Sequence record: MW460245.1
Strand: one strand, 5' to 3'
Length of the DNA stretch: 64,000 nucleotides
A model generated the notes under the pieces. It saw nothing but the letters and a program-made list of their open reading frames with translations. It made no database searches and was not told the DNA's origin. Below are positions 4,093 through 16,463 of this stretch, one piece after another. Position 1 is the first letter of the stretch. Each line of letters starts with the position of its first letter. A program made the position numbers and the translations under genes.

Positions 4093-5043
4093 TTAACGGG
4101 AAAGCATGATGGTGGATTCGTTACGCTTGAGCAGCTTGATGCACTCCTCAATCTTTTCCCAGCCGTGAACTTCCAGCAGCTTACGGTATTGACCCCAACC
4201 GCCTTGGAAATTGCCGCTTGAGAGATGTTCAGGCGTTGCGCAGGCTTGGTGCTCCGAAGGGGACGCATGAATCGGTTCAGCGACGACGAGGTCATCGTGC
4301 AGCTTGATGTCCTTCTGTACCTCAGGGTTCGATTGGTCGTGGTTGTTGTACGACGTGCGCGCGCATCGAGCGGTCGACATGCGGATCAGGTCCGTAACCG
4401 GATACGACTTGCGTTCTTCCATCGTAACGAACGGCAGGTGCCAGCTGCGTGCGTCCTGCATCTTGTAGTGGTCGATCTTACGGAACGTCGCCTTCGCCTG
4501 CGCTACCTTCATCGTAAACGCAAGATCCTGAATCTCCGGCTGCGCGTCCTTGTGGTCACGAAGTTCGTACCAGTTATCCCATTCAGTGGATGTCAGGCAG
4601 ACGGTGATCCAGCCGTAGGGCTCCGTACCACGTCCTGCGATCTGCTTGTGGACACCTGCATTCGTGAATGCCTCTGCCCAGTCAGCAGCCGCATTAGCAG
4701 CAGCGCGCCACGCATCTTTCAGCGACAGCCATTCGCCAGTGACCGGGTGACGTACCAACGTACCTTCCGGAAGCTCTTCGCGTGCCTGCATACCCGGCTG
4801 ATTCTTGCCCCAGAAAACAGGACCTGCCGGATCATTGCGAATGTCGGCGATGAGCTTCGCCGTCGGGATAGCACGCGTGCTGCTTGCGTTGCGGCTGAAC
4901 ACGCGATGCGTCATGACTTCTGCGTGGATAGCACGCCAGTACCGCATGAGGAACGTCGTGATCGGCTTTTGCGTGCTGCCGTTGATCGACGCCTCGATGA
5001 CTGCAACCTTGCAGCCCTTACCATGTTCCCAATTGAATTCCAT
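4093..5043 (-). CDS. thyX: Flavin-dependent thymidylate synthase (phage ThyX/Thy1)
   Basis: AEVMTHRVFSRNASSTRAIP motif, STARCARTSY, HASPSEH. Confidence 0.85.
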   Translation of the reverse strand: MEFNWEHGKGCKVAVIEASINGSTQKPITTFLMRYWRAIHAEVMTHRVFSRNASSTRAIPTAKLIADIRNDPAGPVFWGKNQPGMQAREELPEGTLVRHPVTGEWLSLKDAWRAAANAAADWAEAFTNAGVHKQIAGRGTEPYGWITVCLTSTEWDNWYELRDHKDAQPEIQDLAFTMKVAQAKATFRKIDHYKMQDARSWHLPFVTMEERKSYPVTDLIRMSTARCARTSYNNHDQSNPEVQKDIKLHDDLVVAEPIHASPSEHQACATPEHLSSGNFQGGWGQYRKLLEVHGWEKIEECIKLLKRNESTIMLSR

Positions 5044-6832: not shown

Positions 6833-6986
6833 GGAATACTCCCCATGCGAGTTTGATTCGAGTTCTCAGGCCACCCGTCGATAACGGGCGGGCCGGAATC
6901 CATTTGCCTTCCACTACCATATGCACGTCACACTTATCCAGCGTGCATGCGAAGATGCGTTGGGGCGCTTGATTACGTTTAGCCAT
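6789..6986 (-). CDS. Small hypothetical protein
   Basis: RBS upstream; operonic. Confidence 0.45.
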   Translation of the reverse strand: MAKRNQAPQRIFACTLDKCDVHMVVEGKWIPARPLSTGGLRTRIKLAWGVFRGRYDALDWNLPRS

Positions 6987-7494
6987 GTGTGTCTTTCTCC
7001 CTCATGTCAGGTTGAATGCAGCAGATACCGAGCTCACGCCAGCGCTCCACAAGAGGCATGTAGTCCTCATACACCAGGAAGACTTCACGAAGGTCACGAC
7101 CAGCGATGTGCTGGAGCGCCCACGGTTTGAATTCCTCATCAGGCATATGGATGTCATGCGGATCGTCAGTCGCCCAACCCTTGATGTGATTCGGCCGCAT
7201 GATAAGCTGATCGTCCTTGATCTTGAGGCTCACATGCTGTCGAAGCTGGTGCAGCGTGGTCAGGCGTGTCTTCTCTGCGCGCGACGTTATGAACAGCACG
7301 TCGAAGACAGAGGGTTGGCTCAGAAAGAACTGGCAGATCGTGACACCCTGTTCAATGGGAGTATCTCGCTCCCAGGCGTTGTGGAACGACTCCCAGTCTC
7401 CGTTATCGAGGAATCGAGCGCGTGCCTTGTTCGAGAGGAGACAACCATCCACATCGAACAGGCAGAGCTTTTTAAGCTTGCGGCGCGGCAGCAT
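6979..7494 (-). CDS. HAD-family phosphatase (PseT/PNKP 3'-phosphatase-like)
   Basis: LFDVDG motif I, ITSR motif II, IMRP...K, YED motif IV; alternative TTG start at 7530. Confidence 0.8.
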   Translation of the reverse strand: MLPRRKLKKLCLFDVDGCLLSNKARARFLDNGDWESFHNAWERDTPIEQGVTICQFFLSQPSVFDVLFITSRAEKTRLTTLHQLRQHVSLKIKDDQLIMRPNHIKGWATDDPHDIHMPDEEFKPWALQHIAGRDLREVFLVYEDYMPLVERWRELGICCIQPDMREKDTHG

Positions 7495-7768
7495 CGAGGG
7501 CCTTCCATGCGCGAACGAGACGGCGTTCAAGGACTTCGCGGTACTTGTCCATGTAGGACAGTTGATCGCGCAGGTCGAATTGCTCTTCGCCTACCAGCGT
7601 AGTGAACAACCCATTCTTGGTGATGAAGGCAGCAAGAGCAACGCCCTTCAGCTTGAGCTCTGCGTGCTCCTGGTAGACGCGCTGCATGTGCGCAGGCAGG
7701 AGGCGCACGTCGATATCACGAATGCTCACAGGTGCAGCGGAAGCGTTGGAAGTGTAGGTCGATGCCAT
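7472..7768 (-). CDS. Small conserved phage protein (crAss001_48-like helical hairpin)
   Basis: EHAEL..K...LAAFI...F..L..EEQ..L..QL..M..Y..VL..RL pattern. Confidence 0.6.
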   Translation of the reverse strand: MASTYTSNASAAPVSIRDIDVRLLPAHMQRVYQEHAELKLKGVALAAFITKNGLFTTLVGEEQFDLRDQLSYMDKYREVLERRLVRAWKALDAAAPQA

Positions 7769-7782
7769 TTCAGACTCCTTGT

Positions 7783-8454
7783 TTAACGACGAAGGCCCTT
7801 AGCGAGGGCAAAGAATTCCTGGCGAACCTCCGGCTTGCGGAAGTCACCGCCGAGTTGCGAGGTGATCGTGTCGCTGCATGCGTCCATCACGCCTCGCGTT
7901 TTGACGCACATATGCTCTGCTTCAAGGACGACCGCGACGTGAGGCGTGTCCAGGATGAACTTGAGCGTCTCGAAGATTTGGGCAGTCAGGCGTTCCTGCA
8001 CTTGCGGTCGACGGCAGAAGAAGTCCACGATGCGATTGATCTTGGACAGGCCCACCACGTCCTTGTTTGGGATGTAAGCAACAAATGCCTCGCCAATTAT
8101 TGGCAAAAAATGGTGCTCGCAGGTCGAGTGAACCGTTGCATGACCACGGATCATCTCGTCATATTTGAACTTGTTCTCGACGACGGTAGCCTTCGGGAAG
8201 TTGTTGTAGTCCAGGCCATAGAAGATTTCCTGGGTGAACATCTTGGCGATACGCTTCGGCGTCTCGTACAGCGAATCGTCCTTCAGGTCGAGATTCAGTT
8301 CGGCCATGATCGCAGCCATATGCGATTCGATCTCTGCGCGGCGCGGCTTATGGAGCTCCGGGTGATGGACCATCGGCGTTTCCAGACCCATTTCGTACAG
8401 GTGCTGGTGAACCTTATGGCCGATGCTTGCGTCTTTCTGATATTCCGTTTTCAT
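7783..8454 (-). CDS. folE: GTP cyclohydrolase I
   Basis: ETPKRIAK, STCEHHFLP, GLSK, RPQVQERLT, HMCVKTRG. Confidence 0.97.
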   Translation of the reverse strand: MKTEYQKDASIGHKVHQHLYEMGLETPMVHHPELHKPRRAEIESHMAAIMAELNLDLKDDSLYETPKRIAKMFTQEIFYGLDYNNFPKATVVENKFKYDEMIRGHATVHSTCEHHFLPIIGEAFVAYIPNKDVVGLSKINRIVDFFCRRPQVQERLTAQIFETLKFILDTPHVAVVLEAEHMCVKTRGVMDACSDTITSQLGGDFRKPEVRQEFFALAKGLRR

Positions 8455-9050
8455 TACAGGAGTCCTTTCTTAACTTGATCGATGATGTGTTGCTTGTATG
8501 CTTCGAGCTCCGGCTCACTCATTACAACGAGGTTGAGCTCATACGTCACGAGATCCATGTTCGGTATCTCTGTACGCGTTACTTCACCTGCATATTTTGC
8601 CGCAAGCTCTCGTCCCATTTCGGACGCAAGGACGTGCGGTACGAATTTCTGCAGGTCTGTCTTAAATTCCTTCTCGATGTGTAGTGCTGCGAGGCACCGC
8701 GCTGCCACACCGCGAGGGTTGTGTTTGGGATGCTCCGGGATTGCTTGCTTGCAGTCTTCGCACAAACGAACGCCCTCGTAATAAGGGATCGTGTTGGGAT
8801 GCGTACACTTGACGTTGACATGATCCTGCAGGTGCGCCTTGCCTCTGTCAGTTATGTGCCACGAGGAGCCAGTGCGATAGGGCGATGGCTTTCGTGTCAT
8901 GTAGACAAGCTTGTACGCAGACAGTTGCGCCAGAATCGTTCCAACAGCACCGACGTCAAGCCCTATCTGACCAGACACCTCAGAGGCTGTAGCGCCTCCA
9001 ACCTTAGCACCGACTGCGGCCAGTGCTTCCCTGTGATAAGTGGTTAACAT
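8454..9050 (-). CDS. Winged-helix DNA-binding protein (MarR-like N-terminus)
   Basis: TASEVSGQIGLDVGAVGTILAQL...LV...W.ITDRG; RBS AGGAG before ATG at 9050. Confidence 0.55.
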   Translation of the reverse strand: MLTTYHREALAAVGAKVGGATASEVSGQIGLDVGAVGTILAQLSAYKLVYMTRKPSPYRTGSSWHITDRGKAHLQDHVNVKCTHPNTIPYYEGVRLCEDCKQAIPEHPKHNPRGVAARCLAALHIEKEFKTDLQKFVPHVLASEMGRELAAKYAGEVTRTEIPNMDLVTYELNLVVMSEPELEAYKQHIIDQVKKGLL

Positions 9051-9076
9051 CGGTGCTCCTAATTGCGTTGATGTTG

Positions 9077-9397
9077 TTACGCCAGCGTGGTCGGTGCTGC
9101 TACTGCGCGGTTGAGCCACATGAAGGCTGTTTGGAAGTGGCGCATCGCTTCGTCTACTGCTGCTTCAGAGGACGTGACGGTCGATTGCGGCGCTTCCTTG
9201 TTTTCGAGGCGTTGCTGCTCGCGTGCTGCGATATGCGCGCGAACCTTCGTCAGCTGGTAACGCACGCCTTCGCCGAGACCTTTGTTTTCATTCATCAGGT
9301 CGACGTCGGACTGCGTCAGCTTGCGATAACCGCTGATCGGAGGCGGCGTGTACACTGCCTCGATAGGATCGTCATTGCTTTTGATCTGTTCCTGCAT
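9077..9397 (-). CDS. acb2: Acb2-like (T4 Vs.4 family) cyclic-oligonucleotide sponge, anti-CBASS candidate
   Basis: ISGYRKLTQSDVDLMNENKGLG...HFQTAFMWLNRAVAAP matches the Acb2 pattern GYRxLSQEEIDxMNxxKxLG...QTGxMxxxRAxAQP; RBS CAGGAG. Confidence 0.8.
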   Translation of the reverse strand: MQEQIKSNDDPIEAVYTPPPISGYRKLTQSDVDLMNENKGLGEGVRYQLTKVRAHIAAREQQRLENKEAPQSTVTSSEAAVDEAMRHFQTAFMWLNRAVAAPTTLA

Positions 9398-9827
9398 TTT
9401 GCTTCTCCTGTTGAACGAGGTGCATCGGCGTGAAGCGAACAGTGCCATCCTCAAGATTGCCATAGAACATCTCACGCGGGCGCGCGTAGATGTTTCGCTT
9501 GTGCGGCCAGAGGTGCTCGTAGATCACCAGCTGTTCTTGGTTCTCTGTGTGCAGTGCCTCGAACAGCACTCGGTAGAGACCGCCCTTGTAATGGCGGTGT
9601 GTTGCAAGCGCAAGAGCTTCCGTTTCAATCAGAAACGTCTGACCTGCGATTTGCTTGGTTGCGGCAGTGACACGTGCCCAATCTTCGATCGTCTCAGCAC
9701 GCCAGCGCAGCGTGCGGCCAACAGAAGCGTCTGCTCCTGGGAACTTGTTCTCAGCACGCCAGCGATCGATAGTGCTTCTGGAGATATGCAGGTACGCTGC
9801 TACCTCCTTGATGGTCATCGTTTTCAT
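9372..9827 (-). CDS. AlpA/excisionase-like HTH fused to DUF1653
   Basis: MTIKEVAAYLHISRSTIDRW...FP...RW plus HRHYKGGLYRVL..A.H.E...LV.Y...ARP..MF. Confidence 0.75.
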   Translation of the reverse strand: MKTMTIKEVAAYLHISRSTIDRWRAENKFPGADASVGRTLRWRAETIEDWARVTAATKQIAGQTFLIETEALALATHRHYKGGLYRVLFEALHTENQEQLVIYEHLWPHKRNIYARPREMFYGNLEDGTVRFTPMHLVQQEKQNAGTDQKQ

Positions 9828-10018
9828 GGGTACATGATCCCTACAGAGTTAACGACAGGAGCCTGATAACCGTTCTCATCAGAGAAGAGCGAACTACCAG
9901 TTTCGAGAGCGTAATCAGTGATAGCATCCTCGACATACGTTGTCAGACGGTGCTCGTCTTCCTCGGTGATGTGGTCAGGCCATTCGACTTCCACTACGTA
10001 ACGTCTCTTCAGTGCCAT
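9824..10018 (-). CDS. Small hypothetical protein
   Basis: TAATG coupling with the queE stop. Confidence 0.5.
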   Translation of the reverse strand: MALKRRYVVEVEWPDHITEEDEHRLTTYVEDAITDYALETGSSLFSDENGYQAPVVNSVGIMYP

Positions 10019-10881
10019 TATGCCATTGCCACGAAAAGGTGTTGTTGGAGGCTCAAGCAAATGTTGTTCGCAAGAGCGTACTCACCTGCGTATCGGTAAT
10101 TGGCCGCCGTTGCCTCACGGTTGATGAGCTCGTCGTCCCAGATGCTAGAGACTTCACCTGCGTAAGGCTTCTTGTAGACAGCCATCGGCGATACCATCAA
10201 GCGCTGCATGCCGTGCTCTTCGGCCCATGCAAATGCCCAGTCAGGGATCGTGTGATGCGGCGACTCAGGATCAGCATCGACCACGAACTTCAGGTAGTCA
10301 GCGCGGTTCAGCACCTTCTCCGACAGCTTACCGTACTTACCTGCCTTGTAGACAGCCTTCGGAGAGACAACCACCGTGATTTCAGAAAGCCAGAAGCTCT
10401 CAGCATCGCCTTTCTTGAACAGTGGCATCTCTGCATCCAGCAGCTCAAAGAAGGAGGCCTGCGTGCCGTTCGTTTCGATCTGGACTGCGAGGTATTCATC
10501 TCCGACGCGCTCGAGGAACGCAGCGAGGTTATGCTGGAGCGTAGGTTCGCCGCCGGTGATAACCAGTACACGTTTGCGTCGGTCAACGCGGAAGGTATCG
10601 ATGATCGAATCGATCTTGTCGAACGACATGACCTTACCTTCGTTGAACTGGAACGAGGTGTCGCAGAAACGGCAAGCGCCAGCCTCGCTCTTTGCTCCGT
10701 AGTTGCAGCCAGATAGACGGATGAAGACAGCAGGCATCCCGGCGTAGGGCCCTTCGCCCTGCAGCGTGTCGAAAATCGAGGTGACCAACAGTTCGTCAGG
10801 CTTCAGGATGTAATCGTATTCCGCTTTTGCAACGTTGCGGTCAACGTTCTGTACAACAATGGGGAACGTCTTATGCGTCAT
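10018..10881 (-). CDS. queE: 7-carboxy-7-deazaguanine synthase (radical SAM), atypical CX10CX2C motif
   Basis: SIFDTLQGEG...PAVFIRLSGC, CRFCDT, VITGGEP.LQ, QIETNG, VVSPK, SLQQH; RBS AAGGA before ATG 10881. Confidence 0.95.
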   Translation of the reverse strand: MTHKTFPIVVQNVDRNVAKAEYDYILKPDELLVTSIFDTLQGEGPYAGMPAVFIRLSGCNYGAKSEAGACRFCDTSFQFNEGKVMSFDKIDSIIDTFRVDRRKRVLVITGGEPTLQHNLAAFLERVGDEYLAVQIETNGTQASFFELLDAEMPLFKKGDAESFWLSEITVVVSPKAVYKAGKYGKLSEKVLNRADYLKFVVDADPESPHHTIPDWAFAWAEEHGMQRLMVSPMAVYKKPYAGEVSSIWDDELINREATAANYRYAGEYALANNICLSLQQHLFVAMA

Positions 10882-10895
10882 GGTGATTCCTTGGC

Positions 10896-11342
10896 TCAAT
10901 AGCTCATCTTGTGGTGGTCCCTCGTGTCTGCGTCGAAGATACCTTTGACCTTCTTCTTGAACACAGGTGCCGTGGAGTTGAATGCATGCCTTGTATTTAC
11001 TTTGCACGCCTCCGGTTTACCACGCTTCGTCTTGATGTACATACCGCGAAGCACCACGCAGTCCACGATAGGGATACCAGCCGTAGTAAGCGCATCGACC
11101 GAATCATGGACGTAGGAGTTCGTCGGTGAGCCTGCTTGAACCCACGCATCAATCGAAGGGTAATGCGGATGCTTCGTCTTGAAGACCAATCCACCTAGAC
11201 AGCTCTTGCCCTTGAAGATGACACGCTTCGGTTTGACGACCTTCTTGGCTTTCTTTGCCTTAGGACTTTTTGCGCTTGAGGCTGCTGCCTGTTGCTTTTT
11301 TGCCTGGTCCTTCTGGGAAGGTTTTGCCGTGGAATTTTTCAT
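10896..11342 (-). CDS. Hypothetical basic protein inside the deazaguanine operon
   Basis: Fills the dpdA-queE gap and overlaps the dpdA 3' end by 83 nt. Confidence 0.5.
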   Translation of the reverse strand: MKNSTAKPSQKDQAKKQQAAASSAKSPKAKKAKKVVKPKRVIFKGKSCLGGLVFKTKHPHYPSIDAWVQAGSPTNSYVHDSVDALTTAGIPIVDCVVLRGMYIKTKRGKPEACKVNTRHAFNSTAPVFKKKVKGIFDADTRDHHKMSY

Positions 11343-12600
11343 AGCGAGAGATTACAGCCTCGTAGTGTGCGTCTGTCTTGATTGTTGTCTGAGCGAGACC
11401 GGCCAGCCCCTTCGTCTTCGAAGTGCTACGCATCGGCTTCCACTTGTTCGCCATCACATCGCGAATGTAGTTCACCAGCAAAGTGAACTTGTTCAAGGTG
11501 ATGTTGAGGTCCATCTTCTGGTGCACCTCAGCCAGCGGCACCTTACCTGCGAGATAGTCCTCAGCCAGTGCACACAGGAAGCGTGTCTGTTCAGCACGTA
11601 CCCACAGGTTGTGTGCTTCGAGGATACGCCACGAATGAATGATGCGCAGGTCATCGATGGACGTGCAGATAGGGCAGTTGCACTGCGGGGTCTGACGATA
11701 CGCCTGGTTCTTCTTCAGGTCCAGCGTCTTGAAGTCAGCCGTGTCGTACATACCGACCAGCGCTCCGAGACGATGGCTCACCGAGTCAGCGCCGATATTC
11801 TTCACGTAGCCGCTACGTTCCAGCAGCGCATAGAAAAACATCATGAGCTTGGATGTTACACCCAGGACGTGGAAGTACTCAGTCTTCTTGTGGTAGCGGC
11901 TAATCACATACATCAGGTTCTCGACTGCTGCGTTCGTGCGGTCGATACCTGGCGGCGGCTTGATGCCGAGACCTGCGATTGCTACCACGTTCGCCTTACG
12001 ATCCAGCACGTCAAGTCTGGCTTTACGAAGTTCGACCGTCGACCCGTGACTGATGAGTGCCAGATCGATACCGGGATCGAGGCGCTTCAGGATGTAGTCG
12101 TCATTAGCCTTGATGAGGTGCGACACCTGACGGAAGTACGCAGGTTCGAAGGCGGTTCGCACCGGCAAGTCCAGAGGCATGCCGATGTTTGCGTCCTTGT
12201 TGTAGCGGTCAATCACGCCATCCGGATGCACGAAGTCCACGTTGGCTCGCAGCAGCTGGAAGCCACCCGAGTCTACGATGGACTTGATGCCCTGTTTCTC
12301 GTACGGTGCTTTCTTGTAGTCCTTTCCCACTTCAGGGTTCGCCAGAACGAGGGAAAGCCCGCATGCCTTGATGGCCGTCGGGCTAAAGATGGGAACGCAA
12401 ACGTCGAATTGCTCTTCAGGAATGACCGCACCACGTGCTGAGGACATGGCCTCTACGACGGTGCGATCCTTTGTACGCCAACGCTTGACCTTCGGGCCAA
12501 ACTCGGTCGTTTCTTTTTCATTGGGCTTGTTTTTGACGTACAGCTGAGCAGTCCGCTCGCTGTACGCCTCAACGCCCGCCGGTACATAGTGGACGGTCAT
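11260..12600 (-). CDS. dpdA: TGT-fold guanine transglycosylase, DpdA-like (DNA 7-deazaguanine insertion)
   Basis: DSGGFQ, MPLDLP, AIAG, FHVLG, GADS, zinc site CNCPIC...HNL; adjacent to preQ-pathway genes. Confidence 0.85.
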   Translation of the reverse strand: MTVHYVPAGVEAYSERTAQLYVKNKPNEKETTEFGPKVKRWRTKDRTVVEAMSSARGAVIPEEQFDVCVPIFSPTAIKACGLSLVLANPEVGKDYKKAPYEKQGIKSIVDSGGFQLLRANVDFVHPDGVIDRYNKDANIGMPLDLPVRTAFEPAYFRQVSHLIKANDDYILKRLDPGIDLALISHGSTVELRKARLDVLDRKANVVAIAGLGIKPPPGIDRTNAAVENLMYVISRYHKKTEYFHVLGVTSKLMMFFYALLERSGYVKNIGADSVSHRLGALVGMYDTADFKTLDLKKNQAYRQTPQCNCPICTSIDDLRIIHSWRILEAHNLWVRAEQTRFLCALAEDYLAGKVPLAEVHQKMDLNITLNKFTLLVNYIRDVMANKWKPMRSTSKTKGLAGLAQTTIKTDAHYEAVISRYEKFHGKTFPEGPGKKATGSSLKRKKS

Positions 12601-12612
12601 TGTGTTCCTTGG

Positions 12613-13725
12613 TTAAAGCGTTCGCAGCTCGTGAATGATATTGCGCATACCATCCGTATCGAGGTCGTCCATCTCTTCCATGAAGTAGAACGGATTCTCC
12701 TCGTAGGCGCGCATATGGCGGATCATGGTGTCGTGCCCCATGTCCCTGAACAACCATTTACTGCTCACGAACTCCGGATGCGAGGCGGCATCTGTCAGCA
12801 CAGGTGCGCACCCATAGATCATGGCCTCAGCAATGCAGTAGCCGTAGTTCTCTTCCCGCGAATGCGAGACCATCATGACAGCAGAGGCGAGCTCTTCGTG
12901 GTACTGCTGCTTGGTCAAGTTCACCTTGATATCGAGGACGCCATCTTCCTGCGCGAGAAGTGCCTGACGCACCACCGCATCGTCGTTCGAACGCAGCGTC
13001 TTACGTGAGGACGTGATGACGAATTGCCATTCCGGGAACTGTTTCTTGAGATCGCGGAACAGGTCGATGGTGACGATCGGATTCTTCTCGGTGTCCAAGC
13101 GGTTCGTCAGCAGGATTTTCTTCTGCTTCGGAATCAGCTTACCAAGCTTCTGGTACTCGGACAAGAAGATCGGATTCTTCGTGACCTTGATGCGGTCTGC
13201 CAGATGCAGTGCGTTCAGCGGAGCGAGACGCCTCGTCATCACTGCCTTCTTGTGGTACAGAGAACCAACGAACACCTTATCGCATGCTGCGATCCAGCCC
13301 ACCTCAGTGTATTGCTGATACGGCGCAGCAACCTCGAATGCGTCGCCCTTCGTGTACGAGGCAGCATGAAGAAACGACACGAGGTGCACCTTCACCTTGT
13401 TCATTTGCGCCATCAGACGAATCTGTTCGAGGCCCCAGAACTCCGTATCGAACACGAAGATGATGGCGCCGTCTTCGACCTCACCGCGATTGAACATGCC
13501 AGCGAGGTACTGGAGTTGGGTGCTCTTGTAGTGACACGTCGAGTTGATGTCGAGGAACGTACCGACCTTGATGTCGTCCTCCAGCAACGGCTCACCGTTG
13601 ATAATGAACACATCGAAGCCAGCCTTGCTGAGTGCCTCGGGAATGCGGCGATACCATTGCTCTGTGTAACGTTCGCTGAGCGGTTCGATCGGCAGGCAGA
13701 TGAGTTGCTTGCGGTCAGTATGCAT
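12613..13725 (-). CDS. GT-B fold glycosyltransferase (GT4-like)
   Basis: NRLDTEK and E-X7-E motif EENYGYCIAE followed by AMIYGC.PV. Confidence 0.85.
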   Translation of the reverse strand: MHTDRKQLICLPIEPLSERYTEQWYRRIPEALSKAGFDVFIINGEPLLEDDIKVGTFLDINSTCHYKSTQLQYLAGMFNRGEVEDGAIIFVFDTEFWGLEQIRLMAQMNKVKVHLVSFLHAASYTKGDAFEVAAPYQQYTEVGWIAACDKVFVGSLYHKKAVMTRRLAPLNALHLADRIKVTKNPIFLSEYQKLGKLIPKQKKILLTNRLDTEKNPIVTIDLFRDLKKQFPEWQFVITSSRKTLRSNDDAVVRQALLAQEDGVLDIKVNLTKQQYHEELASAVMMVSHSREENYGYCIAEAMIYGCAPVLTDAASHPEFVSSKWLFRDMGHDTMIRHMRAYEENPFYFMEEMDDLDTDGMRNIIHELRTL

Positions 13726-14182
13726 TGTCGTCGAGCTCCAGGTCACCCTCGAAGTCAGCCGGGGCGGTTTTGATGGCCTGCGTTACAGGGAACACGAACA
13801 CATGGCGGTCGCGCTCGAACTTGATTTGATCGCCTTCACGCAAGCATTCGATGTCGGTGAAGCTCCAGAACGCAGGGCCTTCCACTTCGTTCTGACCTAG
13901 CCAATGGAACGCAGAAGGATCGACACGCAGCATGAGCGTGATGTTGGACGGACGGTACTCAACGCGCGTCTTGGTTACGTCCATGGTCACGTAGCAGCTA
14001 AACTCCAGCCCCACCTTTTCATACGTGAGGATACCGCTGTTGTCACTTATGTACAGGTGATTGATGCTATGCACGCGCAACGCGTTCTGCACCTTTCGCG
14101 TGTGGTCGCGGACGAACTCTGCGTTGGTGAACAGGGTGGGGATGCCCTTGAGGCGCCCCTCTACTTCCAGTCCGATTTTCAC
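13715..14182 (-). CDS. Hypothetical protein in the modification operon
   Basis: Tightly packed between the deacetylase and the GT; N-terminal GLEVEGRLKGIPTLF. Confidence 0.7.
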   Translation of the reverse strand: MKIGLEVEGRLKGIPTLFTNAEFVRDHTRKVQNALRVHSINHLYISDNSGILTYEKVGLEFSCYVTMDVTKTRVEYRPSNITLMLRVDPSAFHWLGQNEVEGPAFWSFTDIECLREGDQIKFERDRHVFVFPVTQAIKTAPADFEGDLELDDNAY

Positions 14183-14185
14183 TTG

Positions 14186-14893
14186 TTACTCCGTTGTGTA
14201 TTGAATGTCGCCCCAGCGCATCTCGACCTTGTCTTTGCAGACTTCAAGAAGGTACGAATAGAATTTGGCGACGCGTTCTCTGACAGTAAAGCCGCCAACC
14301 TTCTCTGCATAGCGGGCCCTTACGTCCTGCATTTCGAGGCGATTCCAGTCTTCGTCAGTACACTTCACACATACACCTGCACCGTAATGCACAGTGTGCC
14401 ATTCGTAGATGTTGAAGTCCTGCTGTCGGATGTCCTCGAACAGGTAATACTTGGCATCGTTCTGCCAGAGGGAGGACTGCGAAAGGTAGAAGCTGTCCAA
14501 CAGTCGGCGCTTGTCCTTCGAAGCTTCCTCACCGAGGTACACACCTCGTTTCATGTCCACGCTGTAGAAATGAGTGGCGAAGTGCCGCCACCCCCTATTT
14601 ACAGCTTTGTGATCGTCGTGCCAGTCTTGGATCGACGGCACGTATATCTCGTTGTACTCACTCAATGGCAGTGCGTTCTGCTCCCCGAAGTACGGCGTGA
14701 CATGAAGATGCTCGGCGAAGTCCAGAGCTTCACGACGACGAACATTCGTCAGTTCGTTACACCACAGCACTGACACCTTGTAGTCAGGTACAGCCATGTT
14801 TACCGCAGCGCCCCAGCCTTTGCGGATGATGCTGTAGCAACCGATGAGCTCATCGTCCACGTGAGGAGCGATGATTAGAACCTTTGTAGGCAT
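14186..14893 (-). CDS. PIG-L/LmbE-family N-acetyl-sugar deacetylase
   Basis: IIAPHVDDELIG and WHDDH metal motifs. Confidence 0.85.
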   Translation of the reverse strand: MPTKVLIIAPHVDDELIGCYSIIRKGWGAAVNMAVPDYKVSVLWCNELTNVRRREALDFAEHLHVTPYFGEQNALPLSEYNEIYVPSIQDWHDDHKAVNRGWRHFATHFYSVDMKRGVYLGEEASKDKRRLLDSFYLSQSSLWQNDAKYYLFEDIRQQDFNIYEWHTVHYGAGVCVKCTDEDWNRLEMQDVRARYAEKVGGFTVRERVAKFYSYLLEVCKDKVEMRWGDIQYTTE

Positions 14894-14905
14894 TTGTTGC
14901 TCCTG

Positions 14906-15553
14906 TTAGCAGTCGGTATCCAGCGGAATGTCGATCAGGTATTCATCACTGAAAGACACGTTGAATCGATCGATGAAGGCCCAAACGTCCATGTCCGTCC
15001 AGTCATAGATCGGATAGATGAAGTTCAGGCCACCCAGGCCGTTCGGTACGTAGCACGTCAGCTCTTCACGGGACGCAATAGCACCGTTGCGCACGAAGTT
15101 GGTCGAACGGCCGTCACCTCGATCAAACTCAGAAATGCGCGTACCATCGATCTGCGTGGTGTAGCCTGCACGAACGCACTCCTCGAGAGATGCGAATACG
15201 ATCGGACGCTTGCGCGCAGACTCGTACAGGAATTCGCGGGTCAGCGGATGCACCTTGTTCGGACCTGTCGTCTTCGGATTGTGGACCACCTTCATAGGCT
15301 TGTCCCAGAACTCTCGGTCACGCTCATGATATGCAGCACGTGCCAGGAAGTCTACGACGACGCTATCCTTGCCGCCGCTATGGCCGACGAATGCACGGTT
15401 GAGATCGAAATTACCGCACGACTGAAGGCTTGCTGCATTGATACGACGCGTTGCCTCTGCGGCCTTTTCGAAGATGCCTGCCCAGCACTTAGCATATTCG
15501 ATGTCGTCGAACTGCGCGTAAGGCTTGGTATCCGGCTTAGAAATAACAGTCAT
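14906..15553 (-). CDS. PAPS-reductase-like PP-loop (adenine nucleotide alpha-hydrolase) protein
   Basis: HSGGKDS PP-motif, DGTRISE, YPIYDWTDMDVW; lacks the C-terminal ECGLH motif. Confidence 0.8.
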   Translation of the reverse strand: MTVISKPDTKPYAQFDDIEYAKCWAGIFEKAAEATRRINAASLQSCGNFDLNRAFVGHSGGKDSVVVDFLARAAYHERDREFWDKPMKVVHNPKTTGPNKVHPLTREFLYESARKRPIVFASLEECVRAGYTTQIDGTRISEFDRGDGRSTNFVRNGAIASREELTCYVPNGLGGLNFIYPIYDWTDMDVWAFIDRFNVSFSDEYLIDIPLDTDC

Positions 15554-16463
15554 TGTTGAAGATTCCTTGTTCATCGTGGAAGACACGCAGCTTACCTGCA
15601 GGGACTTGACCGCGTTGCAGCACCAGACGCGGGATCGTGAGGAAGTCAGCTTCGACTCCAGCGCCGAAATACGCGGCAAGCATGATGCGCGCACGAGAGA
15701 TGAGCGCACCGTCACCGAACTGTTCAACACTGTCCAGAACGATCCACACGTCGAGGTCTGAGGTCGAGGGCCACTGAGGTTCCTTGACCAGCAGAGTCAC
15801 CTTCAACTCATTCGCGATTGCTTGCCACTTCTCCGATTCAGCGAACACAGGCTTTTGCTCTTCGACGTCCAGCAGAGCGATAACCTTCTTGAATGCATCA
15901 GGACGTGACACACCGTCGAACACGTTCGGCAGGTTGTATTGCGTCATGAGACGACGCAACGTGGCGTGGGTCTTCATTCGGAAATCATCCGACGGACGCT
16001 TGCCATCTTCCTGATACGCCAGAGGCGGCAGGTAGAAGATTTGGTCATATGTCGAGAGCCACGACAGGATATAGCCTTCCATGCCCTTCACCATCGGGTG
16101 ATCGGGGAAGTCGGTGCACGCGATAGCGTACAGGTCCAGCACGCTGCGATCAGTGATGACGATATGCGCGTCGCCCTTCAGCTCTGCCTCTACCTCAGCC
16201 TTCACGAGATTCGAGATCATCCCGAAGTGTGCACGAGGATCAGCCGGGAAGTGTTCATCCTTCCAAGTGATCTTGCGATCTTGGCTACTGACGACTTCGG
16301 CGAGGACATGGTACTGACGCTTGAGGCGTGCAGTAGTCTCCAGTGCCATCGTCGTCTTGCCGCTGCTGTTGGTACCAGTGAAAGCAACCTTGTACTTCGC
16401 ACTGCGCGGCTTGAGGGTCGATTGGGATGCGTCCACGAATTGTTCCATGAGAGTCTTGGTCAT
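15537..16463 (-). CDS. P-loop nucleotide kinase (AAA_28/NadR/TMP-kinase-like) with extra C-terminal domain
   Basis: AFTGTNSSGKTT Walker A, ITDRS, EDGKR lid; C-terminal SDLDVWIV. Confidence 0.75.
   Translation of the reverse strand: MTKTLMEQFVDASQSTLKPRSAKYKVAFTGTNSSGKTTMALETTARLKRQYHVLAEVVSSQDRKITWKDEHFPADPRAHFGMISNLVKAEVEAELKGDAHIVITDRSVLDLYAIACTDFPDHPMVKGMEGYILSWLSTYDQIFYLPPLAYQEDGKRPSDDFRMKTHATLRRLMTQYNLPNVFDGVSRPDAFKKVIALLDVEEQKPVFAESEKWQAIANELKVTLLVKEPQWPSTSDLDVWIVLDSVEQFGDGALISRARIMLAAYFGAGVEADFLTIPRLVLQRGQVPAGKLRVFHDEQGIFNNDCYF

What the first reader, a model, noticed from the sequence alone, without database searches (positions are those of the whole stretch)
9077..9397. Acb2/Vs.4-like cyclic-nucleotide sponge
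Seen: conserved GYR, MN..K.LG, QT..M and RA.A.P. Known: Acb2 hexamers sequester CBASS cyclic dinucleotides, and some also bind trinucleotides and gcADPR. The RW segment of P. aeruginosa phage Acb2 is replaced here by an unrelated segment, which may shift the ligand spectrum. It lies inside the DNA-modification neighbourhood, forming an anti-defence hotspot.
Basis: partly seen in the sequence, partly recalled or inferred. Interest (0 to 1): 0.65.

Follow-up and report, generated by a model that had tools for sequence, protein, structure and literature searches.

The report
Acb2-family cyclic-nucleotide sponge gene
A small gene of the Burkholderia jumbo phage BCSR5, so far labelled 'hypothetical', is a clear but divergent member of the known Acb2 family of phage proteins that soak up the cyclic-nucleotide alarm signals of bacterial CBASS immunity; it is a useful annotation, not a new kind of system.

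Summary
Window 9077..9397 (minus strand) is an intact 106-codon gene with a good ribosome-binding site. It is QRE00057.1 of Burkholderia phage BCSR5, annotated as hypothetical. All four quoted motifs are present and fall on the most conserved columns of the family. It matches Pfam PF24729 (Acb2/Tad1 hairpin; 45 bits, cut-off 27) and the solved PaMx33 Acb2. A profile of its relatives hits PaMx33 Acb2 at 1e-32 and T4 Vs.4 at 1e-10. An AlphaFold model (pLDDT 90) returns only Acb2/Vs.4 structures as significant fold matches. The residues that hold cyclic dinucleotides in PaMx33 Acb2 (Y11, L14, K26, P90) are kept as Y24, L27, K39, P102. The residues that hold cyclic trinucleotides (R67, A70, I71, T74) read A79, D82, E83, R86. 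I therefore predict a hexameric sponge for cyclic dinucleotides that lacks the canonical cA3 pocket. The 'RW' replacement is real, but it is not an unrelated segment: it is a recurrent family variant (E83+R86 in 7 of 66 relatives). The gene sits in a variable slot between QueE and FolE of a 7-deazaguanine DNA-modification module. Verdict: a new member of a known kind, of modest interest. Binding and hexamer formation were not tested.

The parts
9077..9397 (-). acb2-like CDS: 106 codons plus TAA stop. Intact, with no breaks.
   Evidence: Pfam PF24729; PDB matches 8h2j/8ixz
9405..9409 (-). Ribosome-binding site AGGAG, 7 nt upstream of the ATG. It lies inside the 3' end of the upstream gene, which overlaps the acb2 start by 26 nt.
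9098..9331 (-). Acb2/Tad1 hairpin domain, residues 23-100. The model has helix 1 at residues 29-65, a loop at 66-76 and helix 2 at 77-100.
9335..9352 (-). N-terminal motif Y16-T-P-P-P-I21 just before G-Y-R. An aromatic-x-P-P-P-I/V form occurs in 21 of the 66 aligned sequences. The others, like PaMx33 Acb2, have Q-H-K/R-K-I there. Its role is unknown.
9281..9328 (-). Stretch from the Y24 codon (9326-9328) to the K39 codon (9281-9283). These are the equivalents of PaMx33 Acb2 Y11 and K26, which hold cyclic dinucleotides. L27 (= L14) also lies here. P102 (= P90) is at 9092-9094.
   Evidence: alignments; residue roles from PMC10312549 and PMC12393519
9140..9163 (-). Residues 79-86 at the start of helix 2. 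A79, A80, D82, E83 and R86 stand where PaMx33 Acb2 has R67, W68, A70, I71 and T74, the cyclic-trinucleotide pocket.
   Evidence: residue roles from PMC10312549
7783..8454 (-). Context: GTP cyclohydrolase I (FolE), two genes downstream of acb2.
   Evidence: PF01227, E 2.4e-57; 59% identical to FolE of phage Motura
10018..10881 (-). Context: QueE-like radical-SAM enzyme, three genes upstream of acb2.
   Evidence: 50% identical to QueE of phage Motura
11260..12600 (-). Context: TGT/DpdA-like protein. It has no Pfam hit, but its relatives in other large phages are annotated as tRNA-guanine transglycosylase or TGT domain.

Best explanation
The gene encodes an Acb2-family 'sponge'.

Inferred mechanism, by homology with PaMx33 Acb2 and T4 Vs.4: six copies of the helical-hairpin protein assemble into a hexamer. 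Three pockets form where the N- and C-terminal segments of two protomers meet. Each pocket traps one cyclic dinucleotide made by the host CBASS cyclase (3'3'-cGAMP, cUA, c-di-AMP and the like). Y24 stacks on a base and K39 bridges a phosphate. The CBASS effector is then never activated and the infected cell does not abort the infection.

The second pocket type of PaMx33 Acb2 lies on the three-fold axis and holds cA3/cAAG through R67 and T74. Here it is rebuilt as A79, D82, E83, R86. I therefore expect no canonical cyclic-trinucleotide binding, that is, a dinucleotide-only range like T4 and CHI14 Acb2.

Shown here: an intact gene, family membership, fold, retention of the dinucleotide-pocket residues and loss of the trinucleotide-pocket residues.

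Inferred only: hexamer formation, actual ligand binding, time of expression, and effect on Burkholderia CBASS.
For: - Pfam PF24729: 45.1 bits against a cut-off of 27. PHROG 717: E 3.6e-15.
- phmmer to solved PaMx33 Acb2 (8h2j, 8ixz): E 1e-4 over residues 20-103.
- Profile of 66 relatives against PDB: PaMx33 Acb2 at 1e-32, T4 Vs.4 (7uq2) at 1.1e-10, next hit at 0.024.
- Leave-one-out profile: 104 bits.
- AF2 model: pLDDT 90.1, with two long antiparallel helices.
- Foldseek against PDB: ranks 1-9 are all Acb2 or Vs.4. The best hit is 8h2j_A, with TM 0.70/0.80 and rmsd 2.2 A over 86 columns. Rank 10 has E 0.9.
- Y24, L27, K39 and P102 align with Y11, L14, K26 and P90. Y11A and K26A abolish cGAMP binding in PaMx33 Acb2 (PMC10312549).
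- R67A abolishes cA3 binding and T74A weakens it. T4 and CHI14 Acb2, each lacking one of the two, do not bind cA3. Here both are absent.
- A plausible target exists: CBASS type I and IIs systems are predicted in B. cenocepacia K56-2 (PMC12584637).
Against: - No binding, oligomer or expression data exist for this protein, and the tools cannot model a hexamer or a ligand.
- Identity to characterised Acb2 proteins is low: 27-28% to PaMx33 and about 20% to Vs.4 in the fold alignment.
- R86 puts a new arginine on the pocket-lining face of helix 2, so a rebuilt rather than a lost three-fold pocket cannot be excluded.
- 10 of 46 tested Acb2 homologues inhibit type I Thoeris, so family membership alone does not fix the ligand.
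- The N-terminal 20 residues are modelled with lower confidence (pLDDT 69-80). They carry a subfamily motif of unknown role.
- The BFVD fold search gave only weak matches, the best at E 4e-3.
Confidence: 0.78

Rival explanations
1. It has an Acb2 fold but is retargeted to a Thoeris signal (3'cADPR), like Acb2_43 of Hadary et al. It might do this instead of binding CBASS dinucleotides, or in addition.
For: 10 of 46 tested Acb2 homologues inhibited type I Thoeris. In Acb2_43 an added N-terminal strand builds the pocket (PMC12393519). The window protein has about 13 extra N-terminal residues and a subfamily-specific Y-T-P-P-P-I motif just before the pocket tyrosine.
Against: The dinucleotide-pocket residues Y24, L27, K39 and P102 are all kept. 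Acb2_43 uses T4, H5, L6 and V7 on a beta-strand rather than a stacking tyrosine, and it did not inhibit CBASS. The model shows no beta-strands, although a monomer model could miss strands that form between protomers.
Confidence: 0.1
2. It keeps dinucleotide binding, and the rebuilt three-fold pocket (D82/E83/R86, without R67/T74) binds a different second ligand. On this reading it is a dual sponge with a new second specificity.
For: E at position 83 and R at position 86 occur together in 7 of 66 relatives that are only 30-53% identical to each other. All 7 lack R at the R67 column. Fisher p is 3e-6, not corrected for shared ancestry. This suggests a selected alternative design rather than decay.
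Against: The two acidic residues D82 and E83 on the pocket face should repel phosphates. E83 and R86 are three residues apart on one helix, so a simple salt bridge that closes or stabilises the pocket explains their co-occurrence just as well. No ligand is known for this variant. The co-occurrence may be inherited from one ancestor.
Confidence: 0.08
3. It is a helical-hairpin protein with no sponge function: a decayed copy, or a hairpin domain used for another purpose, as in Tad1 or some unrelated role.
For: Helical hairpins are simple folds. PF24729 also covers the Tad1 hairpin. The gene lies among small genes of unknown function.
Against: Every near-invariant family column is kept, including the two residues shown by mutation to be needed for binding. 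No Tad1 chain appears in the PDB sequence or fold searches, and at 106 residues there is no room for a second domain. The reading frame is intact, with a good RBS and the same GC3 as its neighbours.
Confidence: 0.04

Closest known systems
Acb2 of Pseudomonas phage PaMx33 ('p26'; PDB 8H2J, 8H2X, 8H39, 8IXZ-8IY2)
   Same: Same Pfam family, with a direct sequence match (E 1e-4) and a profile match (1e-32). It is the best fold match (TM 0.70/0.80, rmsd 2.2 A). The dinucleotide-pocket residues Y11, L14, K26 and P90 are all kept. It is a small phage protein of about 90-105 residues.
   Different: Only 27-28% identical. The cA3 pocket residues R67, A70, I71 and T74 are A, D, E and R here. The window protein has about 13 extra N-terminal residues and a Y-T-P-P-P-I motif where PaMx33 has Q-H-K-K-I. 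It comes from a 227-kb jumbo phage of Burkholderia.
Vs.4 (Acb2) of Escherichia phage T4 (PDB 7UQ2)
   Same: Same family (profile E 1.1e-10) and fold (Foldseek ranks 7-9). It binds dinucleotides only and lacks the R67 equivalent (D61), which is the functional range I predict here.
   Different: About 20% identical. T4 keeps the T74 equivalent (T68), and the window protein does not. The published reason why T4 cannot bind cA3 is helix geometry (no kink, a smaller pocket), which I could not assess here.
Acb2_43 (Thoeris-inhibiting Acb2 homologue; PMC12393519)
   Same: Same family and hexameric hairpin architecture. Both have extra residues at the N-terminus.
   Different: Acb2_43 binds 3'cADPR through an added beta-strand (T4-V7), K19 and K55, and it does not inhibit CBASS. 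The window protein keeps the stacking tyrosine and shows no predicted strands. Its sequence was not at hand, so this comparison rests on the paper's description.
Nearest database relative, P0003 (87 aa, in a Mu-like prophage, locus L002 8001-8264)
   Same: 52% identical over residues 21-104. It shares the D-E-A-x-R variant of helix 2 and lacks both R67 and T74 equivalents.
   Different: It lies between the Mu-type major head gene and the tail genes of a temperate Mu-like element, not in a DNA-modification module of a jumbo phage. It has no long N-terminal extension.

Membership tests
Acb2 (anti-CBASS 2) sponge family | Sequence match to the curated family model (Pfam PF24729, Acb2/Tad1 hairpin) above its gathering score | tested here: met
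   45.1 bits against a cut-off of 27, E 1.1e-11, residues 23-100
Acb2 (anti-CBASS 2) sponge family | Significant similarity to experimentally characterised members (PaMx33 Acb2, T4 Vs.4) | tested here: met
   phmmer E 1e-4 to 8h2j/8ixz. Profile E 1e-32 to 8h2j and 1.1e-10 to 7uq2. Leave-one-out profile 104 bits.
Acb2 (anti-CBASS 2) sponge family | Protomer fold: an N-terminal segment plus two long antiparallel helices | tested here: met
   AF2 pLDDT 90.1 with helices at 29-65 and 77-100. Foldseek PDB ranks 1-9 are all Acb2 or Vs.4, with TM up to 0.70/0.80.
Acb2 (anti-CBASS 2) sponge family | Cyclic-dinucleotide pocket residues (PaMx33 Y11 and K26, plus L14 and P90) | tested here: met
   Y24, K39, L27 and P102 in three independent alignments. 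61 of 66 relatives carry the same four residues.
Acb2 (anti-CBASS 2) sponge family | Homo-hexamer with three dinucleotide pockets at protomer interfaces | not testable with these tools
   Only monomer prediction is available.
Acb2 (anti-CBASS 2) sponge family | Binds and sequesters CBASS signals without cleaving them | not testable with these tools
   Biochemical property, inferred from the conserved pocket only.
Acb2 subgroup that also binds cyclic trinucleotides (PaMx33, JBD67 type) | R67 and T74 equivalents on the three-fold axis | tested here: not met
   A79 (or a gap) and R86 stand there. A70 and I71 are D82 and E83. Both R and T are present in 39 of 66 relatives and both are absent in 16 of 66.
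Thoeris-inhibiting Acb2 subgroup (Acb2_43 type) | Added terminal beta-strands that form a 3'cADPR pocket, with the stacking tyrosine not used | tested here: not met
   No strands in the model, and Y24 is kept. Caveats: this is a monomer model, and Acb2_43 itself was not compared.
Tad1 (Thoeris anti-defence 1) | Hairpin plus a second domain, with similarity to solved Tad1 | tested here: not met
   The 106 residues are all hairpin. No Tad1 chain appears in the PDB sequence search at E up to 1 or among the top 50 fold matches.

The most novel reading that the evidence does not exclude
The protein represents a distinct Acb2 subtype with two marks. The first is an aromatic-x-P-P-P-I/V motif before the pocket tyrosine. 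The second is a coupled E83/R86 pair replacing the R67/T74 phosphate ligands. On the most novel reading not excluded by my evidence, its three-fold pocket or its extended N-terminus binds a signal not yet known for Acb2, so that one protein would cover CBASS dinucleotides plus a second, new ligand in Burkholderia.
Probability: 0.1. Interest if true: 0.55.

Novelty: new member of a known kind. Interest (0 to 1): 0.3.

Why it matters
- **Annotation:** it gives a function to a 'hypothetical' gene of a Burkholderia cepacia-complex jumbo phage. BCSR5 appears in phage-therapy literature.
- **Host range:** it predicts that this phage can blunt cyclic-dinucleotide CBASS, a defence predicted in B. cenocepacia K56-2. 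That bears on reading host-range data. It also bears on whether sponge-sensing systems such as Panoptes (PMC12657218, listed) would detect this phage.
- **Family:** it adds a divergent sequence, with no relative above 52% identity among 1.84 billion cluster representatives. It also points to a recurrent E/R variant of the three-fold pocket whose ligand behaviour has not been described in the papers I read.
- **Genome organisation:** it shows an anti-signalling gene in a variable slot of an otherwise conserved 7-deazaguanine DNA-modification module.

Tried and rejected
1. The word-indexed protein search found only the protein itself and one partial hit. The exhaustive phmmer search was needed.
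2. Three long 'hits' (P0010, 1348 aa; P0027, 823 aa; P0050, 4145 aa) looked like tandem arrays of Acb2 domains. Pfam shows that P0027 is a run of FMN_bind repeats and P0010 is repetitive, low-complexity sequence, with no PF24729 in either. They are spurious. P0050 was not examined.
3. I tested whether the neighbouring PF21825 (crAss001_48-like) protein at 7472-7768 is a second, distant hairpin sponge. hhalign probability is 0.4%, so the idea is rejected. None of eight longer Acb2-containing relatives carries PF21825. One carries an HNH domain.
4. A search for a second Acb2 copy in the window found none among 830 ORFs.
5. The supplementary tables of PMC12393519, which would show whether this protein or its subtype was among the 46 tested homologues, are not held.
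6. The 198-aa neighbour at 8454-9050 has no relative in the 5.8-billion-protein collection and no family match, so it says nothing for or against a 'hotspot'.
7. No sigma-70-like promoter or convincing terminator flanks the gene, so it is probably co-transcribed with its neighbours. This is a weak negative, because phage promoters may differ.
8. The BFVD fold search gave only weak matches (best E 4e-3), and these were not informative.
9. GC and GC3 give no sign of recent acquisition.

Full report
**What the window is.** The window is identical to positions 1-64000 of Burkholderia phage BCSR5 (MW460245.1, 227,351 bp, isolated from sewage). A review lists it as a jumbo myovirus of B. cepacia in an unclassified genus (PMC12388082). 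The finding's coordinates, 9077..9397, equal the annotated CDS QRE00057.1, 'hypothetical protein', on the minus strand.

**The observation.**
- The frame is open for 106 codons and ends in TAA.
- The ATG at 9397 is preceded by AGGAG at 9405-9409 with a 7-nt spacer.
- A longer frame from a GTG at 9475 exists. The first methionine of relatives aligns with the ATG, and the record's annotators chose the same start.
- The four quoted motifs are all there: G23-Y24-R25, M35-N36-x-x-K39-x-L41-G42, Q89-T90-x-x-M93 and R97-A98-x-A100-x-P102.
- They are not chance. Pfam PF24729 (Acb2/Tad1 hairpin) matches residues 23-100 at E 1.1e-11, with 45.1 bits against a curated cut-off of 27. PHROG 717 matches at 3.6e-15.
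- A profile built from 65 relatives without the window protein scores it at 104 bits (E 1.8e-31). No other of 830 window ORFs scores better than E 0.4.

**Relatives.**
- The word-indexed search found almost nothing.
- The exhaustive phmmer search of 1.84 billion cluster representatives found 103 proteins at E up to 1e-3. Only one besides the protein itself is below 1e-10, and none is more than 52% identical. This is therefore a divergent member.
- I aligned the window protein with 65 full-length hits as alignment A1.
- The near-invariant columns are G23 (66/66), Y24 (64), R25 (62), L27 (64), L34 (62), N36 (64), K39 (64), M93 (65), R97 (65) and P102 (65). The window protein has the common residue at every one.
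- The A1 profile hits the solved PaMx33 Acb2 chains at 1e-32 and 5.5e-32, and T4 Vs.4 (7uq2) at 1.1e-10. The next chain is at 0.024.
- The single sequence alone already hits PaMx33 Acb2 at 1e-4.

**Fold.**
- AlphaFold2 on A1 gave mean pLDDT 90.1 and pTM 0.70. The model has an N-terminal coil (residues 1-28; pLDDT 69-88 by block), helix 29-65, loop 66-76 and helix 77-100.
- Foldseek against PDB returned Acb2 (8h2x, 8h2j) at ranks 1-6 and Vs.4 (7uq2) at ranks 7-9.
- The best match is 8h2j_A, with TM 0.70 by query and 0.80 by target, and rmsd 2.2 A over 86 columns. Rank 10 drops to E 0.9.
- The BFVD search was weak but listed several proteins named 'Acb2/Tad1 hairpin domain-containing'.

**Ligand pockets.** In PaMx33 Acb2, cyclic dinucleotides sit between the N-terminal parts of two protomers. 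Y11 stacks on a base and K26 forms salt bridges. Y11A and K26A abolish binding (PMC10312549). L14 and P90 add hydrophobic contacts (PMC12393519). Counting along the tool-printed alignment, and confirmed by the profile alignments and by MAFFT, these are Y24, K39, L27 and P102 here. 61 of 66 relatives share all four.

- R67A abolishes cA3 binding and T74A weakens it.
- These residues are known to vary. T4 Acb2 has only the threonine and CHI14 Acb2 has only the arginine. Both bind dinucleotides but not cA3.
- In the window protein these columns read A79 (R in 49/66), A80 (W in 37/66), D82, E83 and R86 (T in 40/66).
- The pairwise alignment instead places R67-W68 in a gap. It agrees on D82, E83 and R86.
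- Both R and T are present in 39 of 66 relatives. Both are absent in 16, including this one.
- I therefore predict dinucleotide binding without canonical trinucleotide binding. This is an inference from residues, not a measurement.

**The replacement is a family variant, not an unrelated segment.**
- Among the 16 relatives lacking both residues, a pattern of acidic-E-(A/G)-x-R recurs.
- E at position 83 and R at position 86 occur together in 7 of 66 sequences. E occurs alone in 4, R alone in 1, and neither in 54. Fisher p is 3e-6, not corrected for shared ancestry.
- All seven lack R at the R67 column. They are only 30-53% identical to each other, and they include the nearest relative, P0003.
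- The two positions are three residues apart on one helix, on the face that lines the three-fold pocket in PaMx33.
- A salt bridge that closes or stabilises that cavity is the simplest reading. A rebuilt pocket with a new ligand cannot be excluded.
- A second subgroup mark is the N-terminal aromatic-x-P-P-P-I/V motif just before G-Y-R. It is present in 21 of 66 sequences, and it does not track the loss of R-W.

**Context.**
- All genes from 223 to beyond 22000 are on the minus strand and tightly packed.
- In the direction of transcription the order is as follows:

| Gene | Coordinates |
|---|---|
| TGT/DpdA-like | 11260-12600 |
| 97-aa gene | 10896-11189 |
| QueE-like radical-SAM | 10018-10881 |
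| 64-aa gene | 9824-10018 |
| HTH_17 + DUF1653 protein | 9372-9827 |
| acb2 | 9077-9397 |
| 198-aa orphan | 8454-9050 |
| FolE | 7783-8454 |
| PF21825 protein | 7472-7768 |
| HAD/PNKP-like phosphatase | 6979-7494 |

- The TGT-like protein has no Pfam hit, but its tblastn relatives are annotated as tRNA-guanine transglycosylase or TGT domain.
- Achromobacter phage Motura has the same order, TGT-x-QueE-x-FolE (FolE 59%, QueE 50% and TGT 25% identical). It has a single 119-aa gene between QueE and FolE and no Acb2 in that locus. None of the four BCSR5 genes in that interval has a BLASTP match there.
- acb2 therefore occupies a variable slot inside a conserved 7-deazaguanine module.
- The placement is not conserved with the gene. 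The nearest relative sits between the Mu-type capsid and tail genes of a Mu-like prophage. Another lies near RusA and HNH genes on short contigs.
- GC (57.3%) and GC3 (66.4%) match the neighbours.
- No promoter-like or convincing terminator-like site flanks the gene, so co-transcription with the module is likely.
- 'Inside the DNA-modification neighbourhood' is correct. 'Hotspot' is only partly supported, because no other neighbour is a recognisable anti-defence gene.

**Target.** B. cenocepacia K56-2 carries predicted CBASS type I and type IIs systems. The type I locus was upregulated during phage infection, and the type IIs system was validated in a heterologous E. coli host (PMC12584637). 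A cyclic-nucleotide defence is therefore plausible in the host group. Which nucleotide those systems make was not established here.

**Rivals.**
- A Thoeris-type Acb2 (Acb2_43-like) is possible in principle, since 10 of 46 tested homologues inhibit type I Thoeris. However, that protein uses an added beta-strand in place of the stacking tyrosine. Here the tyrosine is kept and no strand is predicted.
- Tad1 is excluded by size and by the absence of any Tad1 match.
- A non-functional hairpin is unlikely, given the intact frame and full retention of the near-invariant columns.

**Verdict.**
- The gene is a new, divergent member of the known Acb2 family.
- It most likely acts as a hexameric cyclic-dinucleotide sponge without the canonical cA3 pocket.
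- Interest is modest: thousands of Acb2 homologues are already catalogued (4,204 non-redundant), and variation at R67/T74 is already published.
- The only less ordinary points are the coupled E/R variant and the P-P-P motif, whose consequences are unknown.

Noticed in passing
window 7472-7768 (-): The 98-aa protein matches Pfam PF21825 (crAss001_48-related; E 7e-16) and PHROG 774, of unknown function. Hadary et al. excluded sponge homologues that also carry this domain, which hints that fusions exist. Here it is a separate gene three genes downstream of acb2. It is not related to Acb2 by profile comparison (probability 0.4%).
   Followed up: partly
window 9372-9827 (-): The 151-aa protein fuses an N-terminal HTH_17/AlpA-like DNA-binding domain to DUF1653. 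Its 3' end overlaps the acb2 start by 26 nt and contains the acb2 ribosome-binding site, which suggests translational coupling.
   Followed up: no
window 7783-15553 (-); locus L005 (Achromobacter phage Motura) 7067-12836: The 7-deazaguanine module (TGT-like, QueE-like, FolE) is syntenic with Motura. Motura has QueC and an asparagine-synthetase-like gene upstream of TGT. In the matching place BCSR5 has a GT1 glycosyltransferase (12613-13725), a weak PIG-L-like deacetylase (14186-14893) and a weak PAPS-reductase-like protein (14906-15553). No QueC or QueD was recognised between 4 and 17 kb. The modified base made by BCSR5 may therefore differ from Motura's.
   Followed up: partly
window 11260-12600 (-): The 446-aa TGT/DpdA-like protein has no Pfam, NCBIfam, PHROG or PDB sequence match. 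It was recognised only through tblastn hits (22-27% identity) to genes of other large phages annotated as TGT. It is a very divergent transglycosylase candidate.
   Followed up: partly
window 8454-9050 (-): The 198-aa gene directly downstream of acb2 is an orphan. Only the protein itself was found among 5.8 billion clustered proteins. It has no Pfam or NCBIfam match and one borderline PHROG 'transcriptional regulator' hit (E about 1e-3).
   Followed up: partly
window 4093-5043 (-) and 15537-16463 (-): A Thy1 (ThyX-like) domain protein (E 1.4e-7) and an AAA_28 / thymidylate-kinase-like protein flank the module. This suggests further nucleotide-metabolism genes in the same transcription unit.
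   Followed up: no
locus L002 8001-8264: The nearest relative of the window protein (P0003, 52% identity, the same D-E-A-x-R helix-2 variant) lies in a Mu-like prophage, between the Mu gpT-type major head gene and the tail genes.
   Followed up: partly
proteins P0014, P0017, P0029, P0046, P0052, P0057, P0097, P0102: Several relatives of 150-190 aa carry the Acb2 hairpin at the C-terminus behind a 60-110-residue N-terminal part with no Pfam match. One (P0029) has an HNH nuclease domain there.
   Followed up: partly
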